64,000 bases of DNA, from the NCBI RefSeq assembly GCF_902459465.1, contig NC_047070.1, positions 18,600,001 through 18,664,000 of the forward strand. The letters run 5' to 3'. The notes below the pieces were generated by a model. That model did no database searches. It saw only the letters and a program-made list of their open reading frames with translations, and was not told the DNA's origin. This DNA is from Asterias rubens. Lineage: Eukaryota. The first letter of the stretch is position 1. Each line of letters opens with the position of its first letter. Below are positions 53,501 through 62,287 of the stretch, one piece after another. The position numbers and the translations under genes are program-made.

Positions 53501-55683
53501 AGTATTATAATCGCTACCCGACATTTTGCGAATACCTAGCGGGCAAAATAAACACCTTGTCTTAACAATTGAATGAGAATAATTCGTCAAGATTACATTT
53601 TTCGCTCAAATGCTTAGACAGTTTATTTTTGCAGGCAATGAAGTGTACAGCCATGACAGATAATGGCTATAATAAATTGCCATCTTTTTGATGCAACATT
53701 TGGTTCAGTGACTATTGTGTGTAATCTGCGGAAGTTTCAGAATGGTTCAGTTCAGGTTTGAGTTGAGAGCTTACAAATAAAAAACAAATAATAACAATAA
53801 ATAGGAAATTGTGTTGTCAATCTTACTCCATAATGGGCTTCGAAGGCCACATAAAAAAAATGAAGTTTTGGTTCAAACAACTAAGACGTCGAAGTAGATA
53901 CGAAACGTCGCAAATAGCTGGCCAAGCCATGGCAACCTTCCTTAAAATATGAACAGTTTCTTATCAGCAAAAGACTAAAACTGAAAACCAGGGCCAGAAT
54001 TGTCAACATGTGACGAGCCTGTTAAAAAAGGCAATAAACGAACATCAATTCGCATTCTCTGCCAATTCAGATCATATTAAGTCTAAGTAATACTTGTCAA
54101 CAACGGCTGTATCTGATACGATATCTGTAATGGCAATTTTGTATTATGTTAAATGATTTTCTTTAATTAAAAAATAAACTTTAAAGAGGCAAATGTATAT
54201 GTGGCTAAGATAGTCCTTGGTTATTTCACGACTCCTCTTCTTCGCGTCTCCAATTCAAACAATGGAACATTCAAATAATTTGGGGCTTCAGTATTTAAAG
54301 CCTGTAACCCTGTCTTGAAAGCAGGCATAACTATTTCAACGAATATTTTTAATGACGGTTTATTTTTTTATGTGTAATATCACCCCAACGAAGATGATAA
54401 ACAAAATTTACTAAACAAAACAGTTTTTCTTTGAGAAGGATCAATGTTGCAATATTACTTTAAATATAATCCAGACACGGCATGACATCGTGAAGGCATG
54501 CCCGGCTGTGCATCGGTCAAGGTTACGGTGTAGTGAAAGCGGTTGGAATCCCAACACCACGACTCACTAATCACTTCCAAAAGAAATATTGTTGTTGTTG
54601 AACTAGTGGATACCTGTTGACACCAGTCTGGTATATTGTTTGTCCACAAATTTATTAATATAAAAAATGAAAGGATACAGTGCGTACAATACTTCTTTTC
54701 AATTAATAAACGAAATCAGGCGAGTGCTCATCATTCGTGTTAAATTTGACAACTTTGACGAGTTGGACACTTTACTATACCTATAAGCATCGCAACTAAA
54801 CGTATTCATAGTACGCCACTCTATAAACCTGTGTGACATCCTAGTCAGGGCCAAACTCCCTCCAGGTACAGGCCAAACACCCCTTCAGAAATACAGGGTT
54901 GTCAGAACTGTATATATATATGGCACTCGCTCTTCTTACAACATAAAGACTGACTCTCAATATGGCACATGGTAGTCTATCTTGTAAAAGAAATGCGGAC
55001 TGCAATATTAAATGGGAGAGGCTAAATCCAAACTATGTATACATTCATAATATTGTCTCGATTTGGCGACACCTTGAGGGCAATTTAATAGTTTAATTTC
55101 GCAGCTCGACCACATTTAGCCCCCACCCATTTTCTTTTTAAATGTAAAGAGTCTAGAGGGTTTCGCTCAGATGATTTTTATGATAACTTGAGTGTTTGAC
55201 ACCAACAATTTAAACTCAAGCCAATCCACCAATAGCGGGTTGTCAGTTTGATTGATTGATTACTACTGTGATTGAATGTATCAGGTGGGCTCCTACGTCA
55301 CTACATGATGGATGCATAATTAATTAGGTTAAGGTCGAGTCAGTCTCCGCACCCGTCTTTTTAAACTTGAATGACTTCATTACACAAAATACGAGGTTGA
55401 GGTCGATATACTCCGGGTCCCACTCGTCCCCTTGGAACTATGTTGCAAATAACAAATTGCACTAAACTGAATTTGGTGTAAACAAAACAACAAAACAATG
55501 CATAAAAATAAACTGTACTGGGATGGTCTCCTGTCGAAATGTGACAGCATCAGATGTTCAGGCTAGGTTTGTATGACGTGCTCGACAAGGATTGGCCAAC
55601 AGAACACCCTGACTTCTTTGTAAGGGCGCCTTGCTCAAACTGCGTCATGTGAATACGGTCAGCGGTTTAAGTTTTAAGTGTCA

Positions 55684-55697
55684 GTATTTATAAATAC
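55684..55697. promoter_or_regulatory. Palindromic TATA element just upstream of the signal-peptide exon
   Basis: GTATTTATAAATAC is a perfect 14-bp palindrome about 30 nt before the exon start at 55725; reverse CCAAT (ATTGG) at about 55591. Confidence 0.4.
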
Positions 55698-55764
55698 TCT
55701 TGGTTTTTTCTCTTTCCAATACAGATTTACACGCGCTGCCCGAAGTGACGACGTGACTAACGCC

Positions 55765-55819
55765 ATGAAGATACAACTTGTCATTGTGTTTGCGGTCGTC
55801 GCAATCACACAAAGTGCAC
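55765..55819 (+). CDS. Secreted EGF-repeat protein, coding exon 1 (signal peptide)
   Basis: GCCATG; MKIQLVIVFAVVAITQSA; donor GTGAGT, phase 1; acceptor at 55724. Confidence 0.85.
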
Positions 55820-56029
55820 GTGAGTTGAAATCTATCTTCACTGTTGGCGAAGAAGTGAAGTTTTTGAAAGTTAAACAAAAAACCTTTCTATAATAACAAT
55901 GACGCAGACTATTGGTGAAGTTACAACAAACCCTTAGAAAGGTTAACTTAATCACTGCATTTATAGCCAATAGCCAAATGGAGATAAGACAATGAAGAAA
56001 ATTTAAATTTCAGAAGAGAATTATTCCAG

Positions 56030-56145
56030 AAAAAAAAACCACGCAATCAGGTAGGGTCTGAAAACACAATCCACGCAAATTCGAACCGTGGTCCTAGAAG
56101 CAGAAGGTGGTAAAAGATACTACAACGTCAACCAGACCTCCCGAG
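56030..56145 (-). mobile_element. tRNA-derived SINE (family 3) fragment, intronic
   Basis: CAGGTAGGGTCTGAAAAC..AATCCAC...TTCGAACC, similar to 8520-8660. Confidence 0.55.
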
Positions 56146-56222
56146 TTTAAAACTTTCCAACTTAACTCCATTTTCCGTCTTGCATATTTAATTAATAATT
56201 GTTTATCTTGATTGCAATCCAG

Positions 56223-56339
56223 CATCCAACCCTTGTGATCCTAACCCGTGTGGTCGTGGATCGTGCTTCCGATCAGTAGACGGTACTGGTTATGCTTGTA
56301 ACTGTGAGGAAGGATTTTCCGGAGACACTTGTCAGTTCG
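56223..56339 (+). CDS. EGF-repeat protein, coding exon 2 (EGF1)
   Basis: CAG/GTAAGC, 117 nt, phase 1-1; SNPCDPNPCGRGSCFRSVDGTGYACNCEEGFSGDTCQF. Confidence 0.92.
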
Positions 56340-56955
56340 GTAAGCTACAAAAGCTTTTGGTTATAGCATGGAGGTTCTTTTTTCTACCTCCATGGTTATA
56401 GTAGGTATTCCGATTGGCCACAAAACGCTACACATGTTTTACACACGCCAGTGAGAAATAAAGAGGGCAAAAATTTAAATAGAATAAAATAATAACAAGA
56501 AAAACTTAAAGTGTTTCTTTGTTGCTGGATTCTAGATGTCTTCAGCATTTGATATGTTTAGTACTTTGTTGATATGTTGGTGAGAGGGCTTCAGGAGTCA
56601 TTTGCCGAAAAATGGCATTTCTGTTGCGATAGTCATTTTCGCATAGATTGACTAAACTATGATGTTTCCAATACTACCGCCATTCGTCCAATCAAACTTA
56701 TTTGCCTACTGGGGAACCAGTCACTAGTACATTTGTGTTTTTCTGAGGTTATTGCTATGTACATACAATTAATCTAATCATCCATGGAATTGATTTGTGA
56801 AACGTTGAGTAAAAGGGACGCTATATGCTTGTCTGTCAAGAACTCTACGACACAAACAAAGAGGTAAGTTTCTGCTGCTGTGAAAGAATAATTTAACTAA
56901 TACTTAAAAAAAAACAGCCCTCGCCATTTTTCTACGTTCTTTTTCTTTTTGGCAG

Positions 56956-57072
56956 GTCCATGTGACTCCAATCCATGTGTATCGGGAATATGTTTAACCT
57001 CGTCAATACGGAACAGTTACGCTTGCTTGTGTCCAGCGAATAGAGAGGGTACAAACTGCGAAATCGTTATAA
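56956..57072 (+). CDS. EGF-repeat protein, coding exon 3 (EGF2)
   Basis: CAG/GTAAGT, 117 nt; PCDSNPCVSGICLTSSIRNSYACLCPANREGTNCEIVI. Confidence 0.92.
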
Positions 57073-57616
57073 GTAAGTTATAAGATGAAAAAACACAAAT
57101 CTATTTTACATATATTAGCCTGTGCCTATTAACTTTAGATGCCTGGTTGAATTTTAGTGTAGTGTTGGGCTAAGTAATACCACTTGACATCGTGCCTATG
57201 TAAAGCACGGATCTACATGTTCTTAGATGCAGTCTAATTTTGGTCTGGGCTACATTGAGGTACAAGACTCCGACTTTTCTGGTCTAAGGTAAAAAGTAAG
57301 AGCTTTCAAAATGAGGGGCAACACTTTGGTTATATTTAGGGCCAGACTGCGATAATAGAACATGTATTTAGGGTTATATTGAGGTCCGGTCAATATTTGG
57401 GAATAAGACGTTCTCACAGAAAAGAAAACAAAAATGCGTAAAGCAGTTATTTTGAAAAACTTTGTCTTAAGTTTCTGTTAAGGAATGAACAACTTGATAC
57501 TTCGGGGAACAAACAAATAATTTCAGGAGAAAACAAGCACAACGTTTTTGAGCTCGTCCTCTCATTACTATTATTGGCAGTTAACCAATTCAGAAACAAT
57601 ATTCTTCTTCTTACAG

Positions 57617-57739
57617 ATGCATGCGATAGTAACCCATGTCAGAATGGTGGAATGTGTTTGTCTTCTAGTACTGACACAATGCGGTACATCTGCAGCTGTA
57701 CCTCGGGCCACACTGGAACACACTGCGAGAGCGACCCAG
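57617..57739 (+). CDS. EGF-repeat protein, coding exon 4 (EGF3)
   Basis: CAG/GTAAAG, 123 nt; ACDSNPCQNGGMCLSSSTDTMRYICSCTSGHTGTHCESDP. Confidence 0.92.
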
Positions 57740-58248
57740 GTAAAGAAACGAAGTGCCTGTGTGGCAGGAGATTCTGTGTGTCCCCCCTTCTACGGCAAAC
57801 TGTGTACAAACATCTTCTGATAGCGCCCTCTTTTGAATCCTCCTCCTCCAACCAATTTTAATTTCCCATATATGGGGGACCGACTCTCCGACGGAAAGAT
57901 TTCCCTGTGACCCCGGGATTGACGGTCTGACCATCGTCGACCCGTAGTTGTTTTATAGTTCCATTTCATTTTTGTTGGTGTTCAATCCAAACAAGTAAAA
58001 GAGTCTGTGTGTTCGATTTTCAATTACAGATCCGTCTTGTTTTGTGGCTTTTCTCTTGAACGGAATTCTATTGCAATAATATAACTAAATTTCCATATGT
58101 CCATTTGCCTATGCCCCACTGGCCACCATAATATGGCACAACTTTCTATTATCGTTGCCCCAAAAGACCACAACATTTTGTCACTCGCACCAAATTCAAA
58201 ATTCAAAATTCTAACACATCTGTTTTTGTTTCTTCATTATTTTTGCAG

Positions 58249-58365
58249 CTGCACCTTGTGACAGTTCTCCGTGCCTAAATGGCGGGGCGTGTACCCCAGC
58301 GATTAACGGTGGATACCTTTGCACATGCGCCGCTCAATTCGCCGGCCCACAATGCCAACAAGCAA
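58249..58365 (+). CDS. EGF-repeat protein, coding exon 5 (EGF4)
   Basis: CAG/GTAAGA, 117 nt; APCDSSPCLNGGACTPAINGGYLCTCAAQFAGPQCQQA. Confidence 0.92.
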
Positions 58366-58495
58366 GTAAGAGCTCGTCTGTCTTTAACTGTTCAATATCA
58401 TATGCTGTTTTCATACTTTACAATATATTTATAATTTATTCAAGCTAAGTTTCTCACATCTGTTGGGTGGGGAAACATATTCCAATGAAGGCCGC

Positions 58496-58650
58496 CTGTA
58501 CAAACATATGTGGATGTCCAACATCCAATATCCAAGTGTCAAGGTAGACATTCACTGTACAAACCTGATGTTAATGTCCAATGTCCAATATCTTAAACGC
58601 AACATCGATATTCGCTGTACAAACATAATAAAGTGAATGTCCAATATCAA
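58496..58650. repeat. Degenerate intronic minisatellite, ~60-bp period
   Basis: CTGTACAAAC at 58496, 58555, 58615, each followed by ATGTCCAA...CCAATATC. Confidence 0.75.
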
Positions 58651-58729
58651 ACTAACTTTACTGCCAAGGTTTTTTACCAATCACTAACAATCTCTAATCA
58701 TCCGCTTTTGATTATTTTTGTTTTAATAG

Positions 58730-58849
58730 TGTCATGTGCGTTCGATCCCTGTAAAAATGGAGGGTCTTGCTACCTTAACTATAATGATGGCGTCAATTAC
58801 ATGTGCAAGTGTCCAGACAATTATAAGGGGAAGGATTGCAGCAAACCAG
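58730..58849 (+). CDS. EGF-repeat protein, coding exon 6 (EGF5)
   Basis: TAG/GTAAGC, 120 nt; SCAFDPCKNGGSCYLNYNDGVNYMCKCPDNYKGKDCSKP. Confidence 0.92.
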
Positions 58850-59022
58850 GTAAGCTTTCCTGACTTCAAGGTCTAAAAAGGTGCTACTAGGGCAAGTGTT
58901 AAATGTTGTTTTATTTCGAGCAATTGTCAGTTCGCATTCTAATCTTTGATCGAGTACAATTTGTTGGTAAATTGTTTGGTCATGATTGTGTTTAAATATC
59001 AAGTTTACGTATTGATTTGCAG

Positions 59023-59133
59023 ATCCCTGTTCAAGCAACCCGTGCGCGGGCAACAGTGTGTGTTTGACTGAAGATGACGGTACATATTCCTGCCTGTGCC
59101 GATGTGGAACTGACGGTTCGTGTAGTAATACTG
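59023..59133 (+). CDS. EGF-repeat protein, coding exon 7 (EGF6, seven Cys)
   Basis: CAG/GTAAGT, 111 nt; PCSSNPCAGNSVCLTEDDGTYSCLCRCGTDGSCSNT. Confidence 0.9.
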
Positions 59134-59371
59134 GTAAGTAATATGCAACCTCTGTATCTGACAAAATGTTTAACAGGTGACTTCATTTGGGGCTTCTCCA
59201 CCAAGCATAGGCTAGTAATAGGCTTTAGGCCCTGCCTCTGGCTTTGGCTCACAAGTATTGGGCTCATCATTGTGCATAGTGTTCTGACACACCAAACGGA
59301 GCCCGATCAGCAGAACTGGAGTCCGAGTTGGAACAAGCTCTATACTTTTAAGCATTTTGTGTTAGATATAT

Positions 59372-59418
59372 CAATGTGAGACTTTGTAACGCTAGGTGGC
59401 AGCATTATACCAGGTGAA
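59372..59418. mobile_element. Half-copy of the 13043-13196 MITE, intronic
   Basis: GAGACTTT..AACGCTAGGTGGCAGCA..ATACC.GGT matches the reverse complement of the right arm at 13145-13190. Confidence 0.6.
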
Positions 59419-59489
59419 CTGCCAATAGAATAATATAGTGCTACAAATTGATCAACCTTTAAGCATCATGTTTCCCTTGCTCTTTGCAG

Positions 59490-60826
59490 ATAATGGAGAA
59501 GATGGAGGTACTCGCACAAATGTGGACAGCTCGACTCCGTCCGACACTACCACCCATGCTAATGGTCCAGACACGTTCAGCACCTCGTTCATGTGTTCTG
59601 AAACAACTGACCTTGTTGGCTGCCGTTTCGTATTCACTGAAATGAACAAGTGTAATAATCGCGGCTGTTGCTCCTCGGATGCTCGTGGGGGAGCAAAATG
59701 CAGTTGCTCGGATGGGTACGGTGGCAATCAATGCCAGTATGATTGTGCTAGCAGTCCAATTGGGTGCAGTTCATCAGACAGCAACGCTGAGAACGAGAAT
59801 GGAGGAACCGGAGGAACTGGTGGTGGTGTCAAATCACAAGTTGAGCCCTTCGTCTGCCTGGATGTATTGGCACCGTCCCCCAACTTACCATGCCTCCGCG
59901 TAGCAGAGGAGACAAACAACTGTAGCAGTCATGGTTGTTGCTCAATTGACTCGGACGGTGATGCTAGATGCAGGTGTAGCGGCGTCTATGGGGGTCCCCA
60001 CTGCCAGTTCAACTGCGCCCTTCATCCAGAAGATTGTGGTTCAGCCAATGGAGCCGGGGGAAGTGGTACTGATGGTGGTGTCATACCACAAGTTGAACCC
60101 TTCGTCTGTCTGGACGTATTGGCACCGTCCCCCAACTTAGCATGCCTCCGTGTTGGGTCTGAGACAAACAACTGTAGCAGTCATGGTTGTTGCTCAATTG
60201 ACTCGAACGGTGATGCTAGATGCAGGTGTAGCGGCGTCTATGGGGGTCCCCACTGCCAGTTCAACTGCGCCCTTCATCCAGAAGATTGTGGTTCAGCCAA
60301 TGGAGCCGGGGGAAGTGGTACTGATGGTGGTGTCATACCACAAGTTGAACCCTTCGTCTGTCTGGACGTATTGGCACCGTCCCCCAACTTAGCATGCCTC
60401 CGTGTTGGGTCTGAGACAAACAACTGTAGCAGTCATGGTTGTTGCTCAATTGACTCGGACGGTGATGCTAGATGCAGGTGTAGCGGCGTCTATGGGGGTC
60501 CCCACTGCCAGTTCAACTGCGCCCTTCATCCAGAAGATTGTGGTTCAGCCAATGGAGCCGGGGGAAGTGGTACTGATGGTGGTGTCATACCACAAGTTGT
60601 ACCCTTCGTCTGTCTGGACGTATTGGCACCGTCCCCCAACTTAGCATGCCTCCGTGTTGGGTCTGAGACAAACAACTGTAGCAGTCATGGTTGTTGCTCA
60701 ATTGACTCGGACGGTGATGCTAGATGCAGGTGTAGCGGCGTCTTTGGGGGTCCCAAATGCCAGTTCGACTGCGCCCTTCGTCCAGAAGACTGTGGTACCG
60801 CTAGTGGAACTCAAGCAAACCAATAA
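59490..60826 (+). CDS. EGF-repeat protein, terminal exon: Ser/Thr/Gly/Asp-rich linker plus five 10-Cys extended-EGF modules
   Basis: Acceptor TTCCCTTGCTCTTTGCAG, phase 1, open to TAA (then TAG). Summed CDS is 2097 nt = 698 aa + stop. Confidence 0.93.
59840..60800 (+). repeat. Coding tandem repeat, four 252-bp (84-aa) units
   Basis: Units start at 59840, 60092, 60344, 60596; units 2 and 3 differ at one base by my comparison. Confidence 0.95.
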
Positions 60827-61076
60827 TAGGCAAACACCGTGTCAAAGTTGGTAATCATCAGCTGTCCATATTCTCCATATAAACCACAAATTAATACTCA
60901 TAGCTTAATGAGTTGTGCATAATGTACTGACGTCATAGCATGAGCTTCACCTCAGCCATTGTTGCAATCACCTAAAACTTTTAAACTGGGCGTTTCTTAA
61001 TGATATCGGTTCTTTCCTTGATCTCAAATGACGTGTCTTTCGTCGGTTACGAAGGTGCACACACATAATTGTCAAT

Positions 61077-61082
61077 AATAAA
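61077..61082 (+). terminator. Candidate polyadenylation signal of the EGF gene
   Basis: First AATAAA after the stop, about 250 nt downstream. Confidence 0.5.
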
Positions 61083-61302
61083 AACATGATAATATATTGT
61101 ATATCCAATGTAGTATTGTTTATCAGTGAAAAGAAAACATGAAATAATACAAGTCATTGGTTTAAGAGATTTCCATACTGAAATACAAATACTGTCTTAT
61201 CCAAAGCAAGTCATAACTGTCAACAAACTTCAAAATCATCTGCAGTTTTTGTGAACTCTGTTTCTTGGAGTCTGATTATAGTCACACTTCACATATTTTT
61301 AT

Positions 61303-61325
61303 CATTATTATTATTATTATTATTA
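61303..61325. repeat. (TTA)n microsatellite
   Basis: About 7 tandem TTA units. Confidence 0.9.
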
Positions 61326-62287
61326 CACTTATACCTGACTAGAATTAAAACAAAATCAGGACTCAAGTTAATAATTTTCACCAAATTCTGAATTAAAATT
61401 ATCTGAAATTCTTAATTTTTCTTTTCGTTACTCCCCTGCCTGGAATAAGACTCGGGTAAACCATCGGGCTCGTTTTGTATCCGTTTGGGTGTTCTTTAGT
61501 TGGATAATGAAATTTGCATTTTGTGATGACAATTGTGATATGATATCGGTAAGGCATTTATATATGAATTTTGTTGATTTTGATCTCGCACAAAGCCTTT
61601 TTCGGAAATGATCTATTTTAAGTTTTGTTTTACTTTATTTGTTCTTGTTGATTTACTGATATTGTTAATTTGGTAAGATTTTTTTTTTTTTAAGAAAAAC
61701 CTCTAATTTTATAGGGTCATTTTGAAACAGCAGCTTTTGTTCATTGTATTAACTATTGTGCATGAAAACGACAATCAAATTATTGCCAATCAATAGAATA
61801 CCTTCAAATCTTCGGAGTGGGTGCTTTGTGCTATAAAAGCGTTGGGTATGAAATTTGATTGGAACAATTTTTAAAAGTAGAATAAAACGATTAACACAAA
61901 TATCACTCGAAATGGTGTGGTTTTCCTTAAACTTTGGTCGCCATTTGGTAAAACTGGTTCCAATCGCTAGCACTTTCCTTTTGAATCATGAAAAGTTGCT
62001 CAAGCGTTGCCATGACAACAAAACATTTACATAAACATTTCTTTACTAACTAAATATTTCAAACTGATCAAAACAATTGTTTCAAAAGTGTCAATCTGTC
62101 CAATCTGCAAAGTATTGTTATTTCACATTTCTAAGTACGTTTCTAAAAGAAAACGGAAAAAGCCCTTGCAAAACACAAAATAATCATGTAATACTTTGAA
62201 ACAATTGTAATAAATTGTACGATGAAAATAACTGGGTATATATCGTTATTTTTGTTTGTTTATTCAACTAAAAATGGTATTGAACTC

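What the first reader, a model, noticed from the sequence alone, without database searches (positions are those of the whole stretch)
59594..60793. Candidate new 10-cysteine extended-EGF module
All five copies share C-x(8 or 11)-C-x9-C-x4-CC-x9-C-x-C-x8-C-x3-C-x6-C. The centre resembles EGF (CSxHGxC...CxCxxxxxGxxC), but there are four extra Cys: one N-terminal, the CC doublet and two C-terminal. The first copy differs in most other residues yet keeps the spacing, which indicates a selected five-disulfide fold. I do not recognise it as laminin-EGF, tenascin-EGF or MEGF-type.
Basis: partly seen in the sequence, partly recalled or inferred. Interest (0 to 1): 0.72.

Follow-up and report, generated by a model that had tools for sequence, protein, structure and literature searches.

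The report
Starfish EGF module with four extra cysteines
The five 10-cysteine repeats are real and are an EGF-type domain with two extra cysteine pairs, found in one expressed, already-annotated secreted protein of the starfish Asterias; this is a lineage-specific variant of a very common fold, not a new kind of domain.

Summary
The last exon (window 59490-60826, +) encodes 50 cysteines. All of them lie in five modules with the stated spacing, at exactly the stated coordinates.

The gene has 8 exons (55765-60826). Its translation is identical to RefSeq XP_033632696.1, "fibropellin-1-like", of Asterias rubens. Spliced cDNA contigs join all seven introns.

The core of each module (Cys2, 3, 5, 6, 7, 8) is an EGF domain of an echinoderm family with the spacing C-x9-C-x5-C-x8/9-C-x-C-x8-C. 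That family occurs in a paralogue on the same chromosome and in Acanthaster, Amphiura and Lytechinus. The four added cysteines are Cys1, Cys4 (the first C of the CC pair), Cys9 and Cys10.

No Pfam model covers all ten cysteines. EGF models reach only Cys3 to Cys8, and single modules score below threshold. A profile search of 1.84 billion representative proteins found full-length matches only in the Asterias rubens/amurensis cluster. Structure searches returned only EGF cores.

An 8-cysteine module from another echinoderm transcriptome has Cys1 and the CC pair but lacks Cys9 and Cys10. From this I infer disulfides Cys1-Cys4 and Cys9-Cys10. This pairing was not shown directly.

Copies 2-5 are recent duplicates, so they give little independent support.

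Verdict: a new variant of a known kind, of modest interest.

The parts
55765..60826 (+). Whole gene: 8 exons encoding a 698-aa secreted protein. It has a signal peptide, six canonical EGF domains and five 10-Cys modules, and is identical to RefSeq XP_033632696.1 'fibropellin-1-like' of Asterias rubens.
   Evidence: The joined exons translate exactly to P0039 (name). Spliced cDNA contigs of runs X1 and X2 join all seven GT..AG introns.
55765..55819 (+). Exon 1: start codon and signal peptide (hydrophobic N-terminus).
   Evidence: the signal peptide is judged by inspection of the sequence.
56223..59133 (+). Exons 2-7 (56223-56339, 56956-57072, 57617-57739, 58249-58365, 58730-58849, 59023-59133). 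Each carries one canonical six-Cys EGF domain, and all introns are phase 1. Four of the EGFs carry the C-x-S-x-P-C motif.
   Evidence: Pfam PF00008 at 87 bits; motif scan.
59490..60826 (+). Terminal exon: a Thr/Ser/Asp/Gly-rich leader, five 10-Cys modules separated by 23-29-residue Gly/Ser/Thr/Asn-rich linkers, and the stop codon at 60824-60826.
59594..59767 (+). Module 1, the divergent copy (x8 between Cys1 and Cys2). It differs from the A. amurensis orthologous copy by 1 of 174 nt.
59855..60037 (+). Module 2 (type 2, x11 between Cys1 and Cys2, N-C-S sequon at Cys3).
60107..60289 (+). Module 3 (type 2). It differs by 1 nt from module 4.
60359..60541 (+). Module 4 (type 2).
60611..60793 (+). 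Module 5 (type 2). Its C-terminal part matches the last module of A. amurensis.
59816..60796 (+). Tandem DNA array: 252-bp unit (linker plus module), 3.9 copies, 96% matches.

Best explanation
Each repeat is an EGF-fold domain of an echinoderm-specific subfamily. That subfamily is of the teneurin/tenascin-like 'HG-x-C' type, and the long x9 loop between the first two EGF cysteines is predicted to be helical. The Asterias lineage has added four cysteines to it: Cys1 on an N-terminal extension, Cys4 directly before the third EGF cysteine, and Cys9 and Cys10 on a short C-terminal extension.

The canonical EGF bonds would be Cys2-Cys5, Cys3-Cys6 and Cys7-Cys8. The two added bonds are most likely Cys1-Cys4, which would pin the N-terminal extension against the first strand of the main hairpin, and Cys9-Cys10, which would close a six-residue C-terminal loop.

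The modules sit like beads on flexible, probably glycosylated Gly/Ser/Thr-rich linkers, behind six ordinary EGF domains, in a secreted protein with no membrane anchor. The extra bonds would stiffen and protect modules that have no neighbouring domain to pack against. The array grows and shrinks by unequal crossing-over within a single exon.

Shown here: the pattern, the gene model and its transcription, the EGF ancestry, the restriction to Asterias, and the copy turnover. Inferred: the pairing of the added cysteines, glycosylation, and the stabilising role. The biological role of the protein is unknown.
For: - **Pattern and gene:**; spliced transcripts.
- **EGF core:** Pfam EGF and EGF_Teneurin align to Cys3-Cys8. 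PDB sequence hits are Notch and EGF cores only. The language-model neighbours are all EGF clusters.
- **Predicted fold:** the AlphaFold2 model built from a 62-row alignment has pLDDT 78.5. It shows a helix at residues 15-24, a hairpin at 31-35/41-45, a minor sheet, and a beta-bridge at residue 4 next to Cys1. All structural neighbours are EGF domains.
- **Six-Cys relatives with the same core spacing:** the paralogue on the same contig at 3.595 Mb, a gene on contig 2, Acanthaster XP_022096637 (collinear with this protein), Amphiura and Lytechinus. In all of them the position of Cys4 is a variable non-Cys residue (Y, T, H, E, V, R or S).
- **Eight-Cys form:** P0004 residues 289-333 have Cys1 plus the CC pair but lack Cys9 and Cys10. 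Its best match in this genome is module 1. Cys1 and Cys4 therefore appear together, and Cys9 and Cys10 appear together.
- **Selection:** the ratio of non-synonymous to synonymous change (dN/dS) is 0.3-0.45 between species, and no change touches a Cys.
- **Copy turnover:** five modules here, three in A. amurensis, two in an ENA fragment.
Against: - The tools returned no atomic coordinates, so no Cys-Cys distance was seen and the pairing rests on co-occurrence in one outside sequence.
- A tree of the 40-column cores does not place the 8-Cys module with the Asterias modules. It groups with six-Cys modules of its own protein at 97/94 support, and the deep forks are unresolved. The 8-Cys form may therefore be a convergent gain rather than an intermediate.
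- Single modules score below Pfam gathering thresholds (17.9 vs 24.3 bits for EGF_Teneurin; 17.4 vs 21.5 for EGF).
- Structural Z-scores are low (at most 3.7), as is usual for such small domains.
- No functional data exist.
Confidence: 0.7

Rival explanations
1. The fold is the same EGF core, but the added cysteines pair differently. The N- and C-terminal extensions would be tied to each other (Cys1 with Cys9 or Cys10), and Cys4 would bond the remaining one, giving a 'closed' module.
For: All four extra Cys always occur together in Asterias. The model places both extensions on the surface of a very small domain, so several pairings are sterically conceivable.
Against: The 8-Cys module of P0004 has Cys1 and Cys4 without Cys9 and Cys10. 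That would leave two unpaired cysteines under this scheme. Cys9 and Cys10 are only six residues apart, around a predicted turn.
Confidence: 0.17
2. The extra cysteines form bonds between modules or between molecules, cross-linking the protein into a polymer or matrix. Odd cysteines in teneurin EGF repeats form dimers in a comparable way (from my knowledge of teneurins, not tested here).
For: The protein is secreted and repetitive, with flexible linkers. The closest Pfam model is the teneurin-type EGF.
Against: The extra Cys come in even numbers per module: four here and two in the 8-Cys form. That fits intramodule pairs. No odd cysteine exists anywhere in the exon.
Confidence: 0.06
3. The module belongs to an already named extended EGF class: the laminin-type EGF (8 Cys with a C-terminal extra loop) or the integrin-beta I-EGF (8 Cys with an N-terminal extra bond), with further additions.
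For: The top structural rows include integrin beta3 and beta2 EGF domains at Z 3.7 and 3.5, and netrin laminin-type EGFs appear among the Foldseek rows. The Cys8-x3-Cys9-x6-Cys10 tail is analogous to the fourth loop of laminin-type EGFs (comparison from memory).
Against: No Pfam laminin-EGF or integrin-EGF model hit at E up to 10. The spacings differ. The scores are tied with ordinary six-Cys EGFs. The nearest sequence relatives are six-Cys echinoderm EGFs, so the extra Cys arose within that family.
Confidence: 0.04
4. Cys9 and Cys10 (and perhaps Cys1) are relics of truncated neighbouring EGF domains. On this view the tail after Cys8 is the first two cysteines of a following EGF that lost the rest.
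For: In the profile searches, ordinary tandem EGFs align through profile positions 57-62 with their next domain's first cysteine on Cys9. The EGF1-EGF2 junction of this same protein begins with the same C-Q-F motif and has nearly the same length up to the second Cys of the next domain (sequence). Protist tandem EGFs show C-x3-C-x8/9-C at the same place.
Against: The closest relatives are isolated six-Cys modules followed by low-complexity linkers, with no second EGF. The similarity is a few residues long.
Confidence: 0.1

Closest known systems
Echinoderm spaced six-Cys EGF modules. Examples are the Asterias paralogue (P0008 / contig 10 at 3.595 Mb), Acanthaster planci XP_022096637.1, A. rubens XP_033646832.1, Amphiura filiformis XP_072020329.1 and Lytechinus pictus XP_054759901. 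The family has no name.
   Same: They share the core spacing, the x9 first loop, the HG-x-C motif, and isolated modules on low-complexity linkers. In the Asterias paralogue these modules lie in one terminal exon. The Asterias and Acanthaster proteins also have the same six canonical EGFs upstream.
   Different: They have six Cys only. They lack the N-terminal Cys, the CC pair and the C-terminal Cys pair.
8-Cys module of P0004 (transcript contig from run ERR6349665, an unidentified echinoderm related to the Amphiura protein)
   Same: It has the N-terminal Cys (x7 before the EGF core) and the CC pair, and is 42% identical to module 1 over 48 residues.
   Different: It has no Cys9 or Cys10. It is a single module at the C-terminus of a differently arranged protein. 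The tree does not show it as sister to the Asterias modules.
Teneurin-like EGF (Pfam PF23106) and generic EGF (PF00008)
   Same: These are the best profile matches. They cover Cys3 to Cys8 and include the 'HG-x-C' motif.
   Different: The models cover about 30 residues. They miss Cys1, Cys2, Cys9 and Cys10, and single modules score below the gathering cut-off.
Laminin-type EGF (8 Cys) and integrin-beta I-EGF (8 Cys)
   Same: The principle is the same: an EGF core plus one accessory disulfide at one end. Integrin EGFs are the top structural rows at Z 3.5-3.7.
   Different: There is no profile match, the spacings differ, they have only one accessory bond, and nothing supports common descent of the additions.
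Exogastrula-inducing polypeptide precursor of the sea urchin Heliocidaris crassispina (Swiss-Prot P15217)
   Same: It is an echinoderm secreted precursor with spaced EGF motifs. It gives a weak structural hit over model residues 6-64 (rank 24, E 0.15).
   Different: The hit is not distinguishable from other EGF hits. Its sequence could not be fetched for alignment. This is a lead from memory, not a tested relationship.

Membership tests
EGF-like domain superfamily | Six-cysteine core with C-x-C followed by x8-C, and a Gly two residues before the last Cys | tested here: met
   Cys2, 3, 5, 6, 7 and 8 give C-x9-C-x5-C-x9-C-x-C-x8-C with G-G-x-x-C.
EGF-like domain superfamily | Significant match to an EGF profile HMM | tested here: inconclusive
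   The whole exon scores 34.5 bits against PF23106 (cut-off 24.3), summed over five stretches. Single modules score 17.9 and 17.4 bits, below the cut-offs.
EGF-like domain superfamily | EGF fold: two-stranded major hairpin plus a minor C-terminal sheet | tested here: met
   The AlphaFold2 model (pLDDT 78.5) has strands at 31-35/41-45 and 49-50/56-57. All structural neighbours are EGF domains, though Z is at most 3.7 and TM is about 0.5. This is a prediction only.
EGF-like domain superfamily | Disulfide connectivity 1-3, 2-4, 5-6 | not testable with these tools
   No coordinates or experimental mapping were available.
Echinoderm spaced six-Cys EGF family (unnamed) | x9 first loop, HG-x-C motif, isolated modules on low-complexity linkers, canonical EGF exons upstream | tested here: met
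   The protein is collinear with the Acanthaster protein and the Asterias paralogue.
Laminin-type EGF (PF00053) | Eight Cys with the laminin spacing and a profile match | tested here: not met
   No hit at E up to 10. The spacing after the sixth EGF Cys is x3/x6, not that of laminin-type EGFs.
Integrin-beta I-EGF | Eight Cys with an extra bond from the N-terminus into the hairpin, and a profile match | tested here: not met
   There is no Pfam hit. Structural Z of 3.5-3.7 is tied with ordinary EGFs.
Calcium-binding EGF (PF07645) | N-terminal D/N-x-D/N-E/Q-C consensus and a profile match | tested here: not met
   There is no hit, and the motif is absent from the module sequences.

The most novel reading that the evidence does not exclude
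The 10-Cys unit could be a structurally distinct five-disulfide domain type: an EGF hairpin with an N-terminal helix and two terminal staples. It would have arisen recently in forcipulatid starfish, and its array would turn over faster than neutral sequence between sister species. That pattern would be expected of a protein under species-specific pressure, such as gamete, adhesion or immune recognition.
Probability: 0.15. Interest if true: 0.45.

Novelty: new variant of a known kind. Interest (0 to 1): 0.3.

Why it matters
The finding adds one more example of how the EGF scaffold gains accessory disulfides. It comes with a useful natural series in echinoderms (6, 8 and 10 cysteines) that could show how paired cysteines are gained. 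It also shows a within-exon repeat array that changes copy number and sequence between two closely related starfish.

It does not open a new class of domain. The host gene is already annotated, and nothing is known about its function.

Tried and rejected
- **Single-sequence AlphaFold2** of modules 1-2 gave pLDDT 37 and was unusable.
- **First word-based protein search** with the whole exon was flooded by low-complexity words and returned only the A. amurensis orthologue. Two region-restricted searches found nothing further.
- **Paper searches** found nothing relevant for the RefSeq accession, the run ERR6349665, Asterias fibropellin proteomics, ten-cysteine EGF domains, or exogastrula-inducing peptides.
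- **The tree of module cores** has too few columns to decide whether the 8-Cys form is an intermediate or a convergent gain.
- **The apparent similarity** of the tail after the last EGF Cys between module 1 and P0004 is a few residues long. I do not use it as evidence.
- **Rfam** found nothing in 55000-61500.
- **Not done:** the species behind ERR6349665 and the tissues of the RNA runs could not be identified because the identifiers are coded or not searchable. No complex prediction was run, because no binding claim is made.

Full report
**Observation**

The stretch 59594-60793 lies in one long open frame on the + strand. They lie at 59594-59767, 59855-60037, 60107-60289, 60359-60541 and 60611-60793. 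All 50 cysteines of the exon product fall inside these matches.

Copies 2-5 belong to a 252-bp tandem array with 96% matches. Copy 1 is 43% identical to copy 2 (25 of 58 positions). It has three fewer residues between Cys1 and Cys2 and keeps all ten cysteines. Under random placement of identical columns the chance of that is about 6e-5.

Copies 2-5 differ by only 1-16 nucleotides of 183, so they are nearly one observation.

**Gene and organism**

The only close database protein is an uncharacterised 530-aa protein of Asterias amurensis. Its 90% cluster also holds XP_033632696.1, "fibropellin-1-like [Asterias rubens]", 698 aa, on a contig of the same length as the window's contig.

Joining eight exons (55765-55819, 56223-56339, 56956-57072, 57617-57739, 58249-58365, 58730-58849, 59023-59133, 59490-60826) at GT..AG sites reproduces that protein exactly. 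The window is therefore A. rubens, and the gene is already annotated.

Assembled contigs from two runs of the same organism skip all seven introns at exactly these sites, so the gene is transcribed and spliced as modelled. As expected, those short-read contigs break inside the repeat array. Pieces that cross the copy 2/3 and copy 3/4 boundaries match the window without mismatch.

The protein has a hydrophobic signal peptide, six ordinary EGF domains with one exon each (Pfam EGF, 87 bits), and then the terminal exon. I saw no hydrophobic segment after the signal peptide and no hydrophobic C-terminal tail. There are no dibasic sites. Each type-2 module carries an N-C-S sequon at Cys3.

**What the module is**

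Pfam matches only EGF models. EGF_Teneurin and EGF align from just before Cys3 to Cys8. Single modules score 17.9 and 17.4 bits, below the gathering cut-offs. No model reaches Cys1, Cys2, Cys9 or Cys10.

- A profile of the modules against all PDB sequences finds only Notch, EGF and coagulation-factor EGF cores.
- The language-model neighbours are all EGF clusters.
- With a 62-row alignment, AlphaFold2 gives pLDDT 78.5. The model has a helix over the x9 loop between Cys2 and Cys3, the EGF major hairpin, the minor sheet, a short turn between Cys9 and Cys10, and a beta-bridge at the residue before Cys1.
- Foldseek against PDB, AlphaFold DB clusters and Swiss-Prot, an exhaustive VIA search of 48,161 PDB representatives, and the ESM Atlas return only EGF domains. 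These cover the core, with Z at most 3.7 and TM about 0.5. Nothing spans the whole 67 residues convincingly.

**Where the extra cysteines came from**

A profile search of the window's own genome finds no other full-length match. It does find partial matches to a paralogous gene on the same contig at 3.595 Mb. That gene's terminal exon carries four six-Cys EGF modules on Asp/Gly/Ser/Thr-rich linkers, behind similar EGF exons. A gene on contig 2 has tandem exons of the same six-Cys form.

An exhaustive HMMER search of 1.84 billion representative proteins gave 35 hits at E of 0.001 or better. Only the Asterias cluster matches profile positions 1-65. The others match the core only. The hits include:

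- the A. amurensis paralogue;
- Acanthaster planci XP_022096637.1, which is collinear with this protein but has three six-Cys modules;
- proteins of Amphiura filiformis and Lytechinus pictus.

All of these have C-x9-C-x5-C-x8/9-C-x-C-x8-C, and the residue before the third Cys is variable and not Cys. The core of the 10-Cys module is therefore Cys2, 3, 5, 6, 7 and 8. The additions are Cys1, Cys4, Cys9 and Cys10.

**Pairing of the additions**

One hit, P0004, comes from a transcript contig of run ERR6349665 and is related along its length to the Amphiura protein. It ends in a module with C-x7-C-x9-C-x4-CC-x8-C-x-C-x8-C and no further cysteines. Its best match in the A. rubens genome is module 1, at 40% identity.

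Cys1 and Cys4 thus occur together without Cys9 and Cys10. This argues for Cys1-Cys4 and Cys9-Cys10 bonds.

This agrees with two further points. The model has a beta-bridge next to Cys1. From general knowledge of EGF structures, the segment before the first EGF cysteine runs alongside the first hairpin strand.

A tree of the cores places the 8-Cys module with six-Cys modules of its own protein and leaves the deep forks unresolved. I cannot say whether it is an intermediate or an independent gain. Either way the co-occurrence holds. The pairing remains an inference, because no coordinates or experiments were available.

**Evolution of the array**

A. amurensis has three modules, A. rubens has five, and an ENA fragment in the same cluster has two. 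The ENA fragment may be a collapsed assembly.

Between the two species the identities are as follows:

| Region | Identity |
|---|---|
| Introns | 89-93% |
| Other exons | 96-100% |
| Module 1 | 99.4% |
| Type-2 modules | 85-88% |

The type-2 modules have a synonymous difference of 0.20-0.28 between species, yet within a species they are nearly identical. Divergence above the intron level suggests that the two species amplified different ancestral copies, that is, birth-and-death or homogenisation within the exon. The ratio of non-synonymous to synonymous change (dN/dS) of 0.3-0.45, with no Cys changed, indicates constraint on the module.

**Comparison and verdict**

The module works like, and descends from, an EGF domain. 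It fails the tests for the laminin-type, integrin-type and calcium-binding EGF classes: there is no profile match and the spacing is different. No Pfam model covers all ten cysteines; SMART and InterPro could not be queried.

It is a lineage-restricted variant with two accessory disulfides, found in a single annotated gene, with unknown function. This is a new variant of a known kind and of modest interest.

Its coordinates and length are confirmed here, but the gene is present in RefSeq.

Noticed in passing
G000 contig 10, 3594902-3598999 (loci L006, L022), minus strand: A paralogous gene lies about 15 Mb away on the same chromosome. It has the same layout (single-EGF exons, then a terminal exon with four spaced modules), but the modules have six Cys and the linkers are Asp/Gly/Ser/Thr/Asn-rich. 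Its A. amurensis counterpart is XP_071792946.1.
   Followed up: partly
G000 contig 2, about 19818500-19821400 (loci L007-L013, L023), minus strand: Five near-identical exons at a spacing of about 560-680 bp each encode an acidic helical linker plus a six-Cys EGF of the same subfamily. The gene is annotated as fibropellin-1-like XP_033646832.1.
   Followed up: partly
window 59594-59767 versus 59855-60793: Module 1 is 99.4% identical to its A. amurensis counterpart. The type-2 modules are only 85-88% identical between species, which is more diverged than the introns (89-93%). Within a species they are nearly identical.
   Followed up: partly
window about 57794-57850, 58540-58640 and 59372-59404 (introns 4, 5 and 7): Short intronic segments of 30-100 nt collect very high contig depth in all four runs, with many loose ends. 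They look like pieces of a dispersed repeat carried by many transcripts. Rfam found nothing there.
   Followed up: partly
P0004, P0007, P0019 (other echinoderms): In the brittle-star, sea-urchin and ERR6349665 relatives, the first six-Cys module directly follows an R-x-K-R type dibasic site. This suggests that these proteins are cut to release EGF-like peptides. The Asterias 10-Cys protein has no dibasic site at all.
   Followed up: no
P0040 (ENA, 200 aa, same 90% cluster): This fragment has only module 1 plus one type-2 module. That module's start matches copy 2 and its end matches copy 5. It is either a short allele or a collapsed short-read assembly.
   Followed up: no
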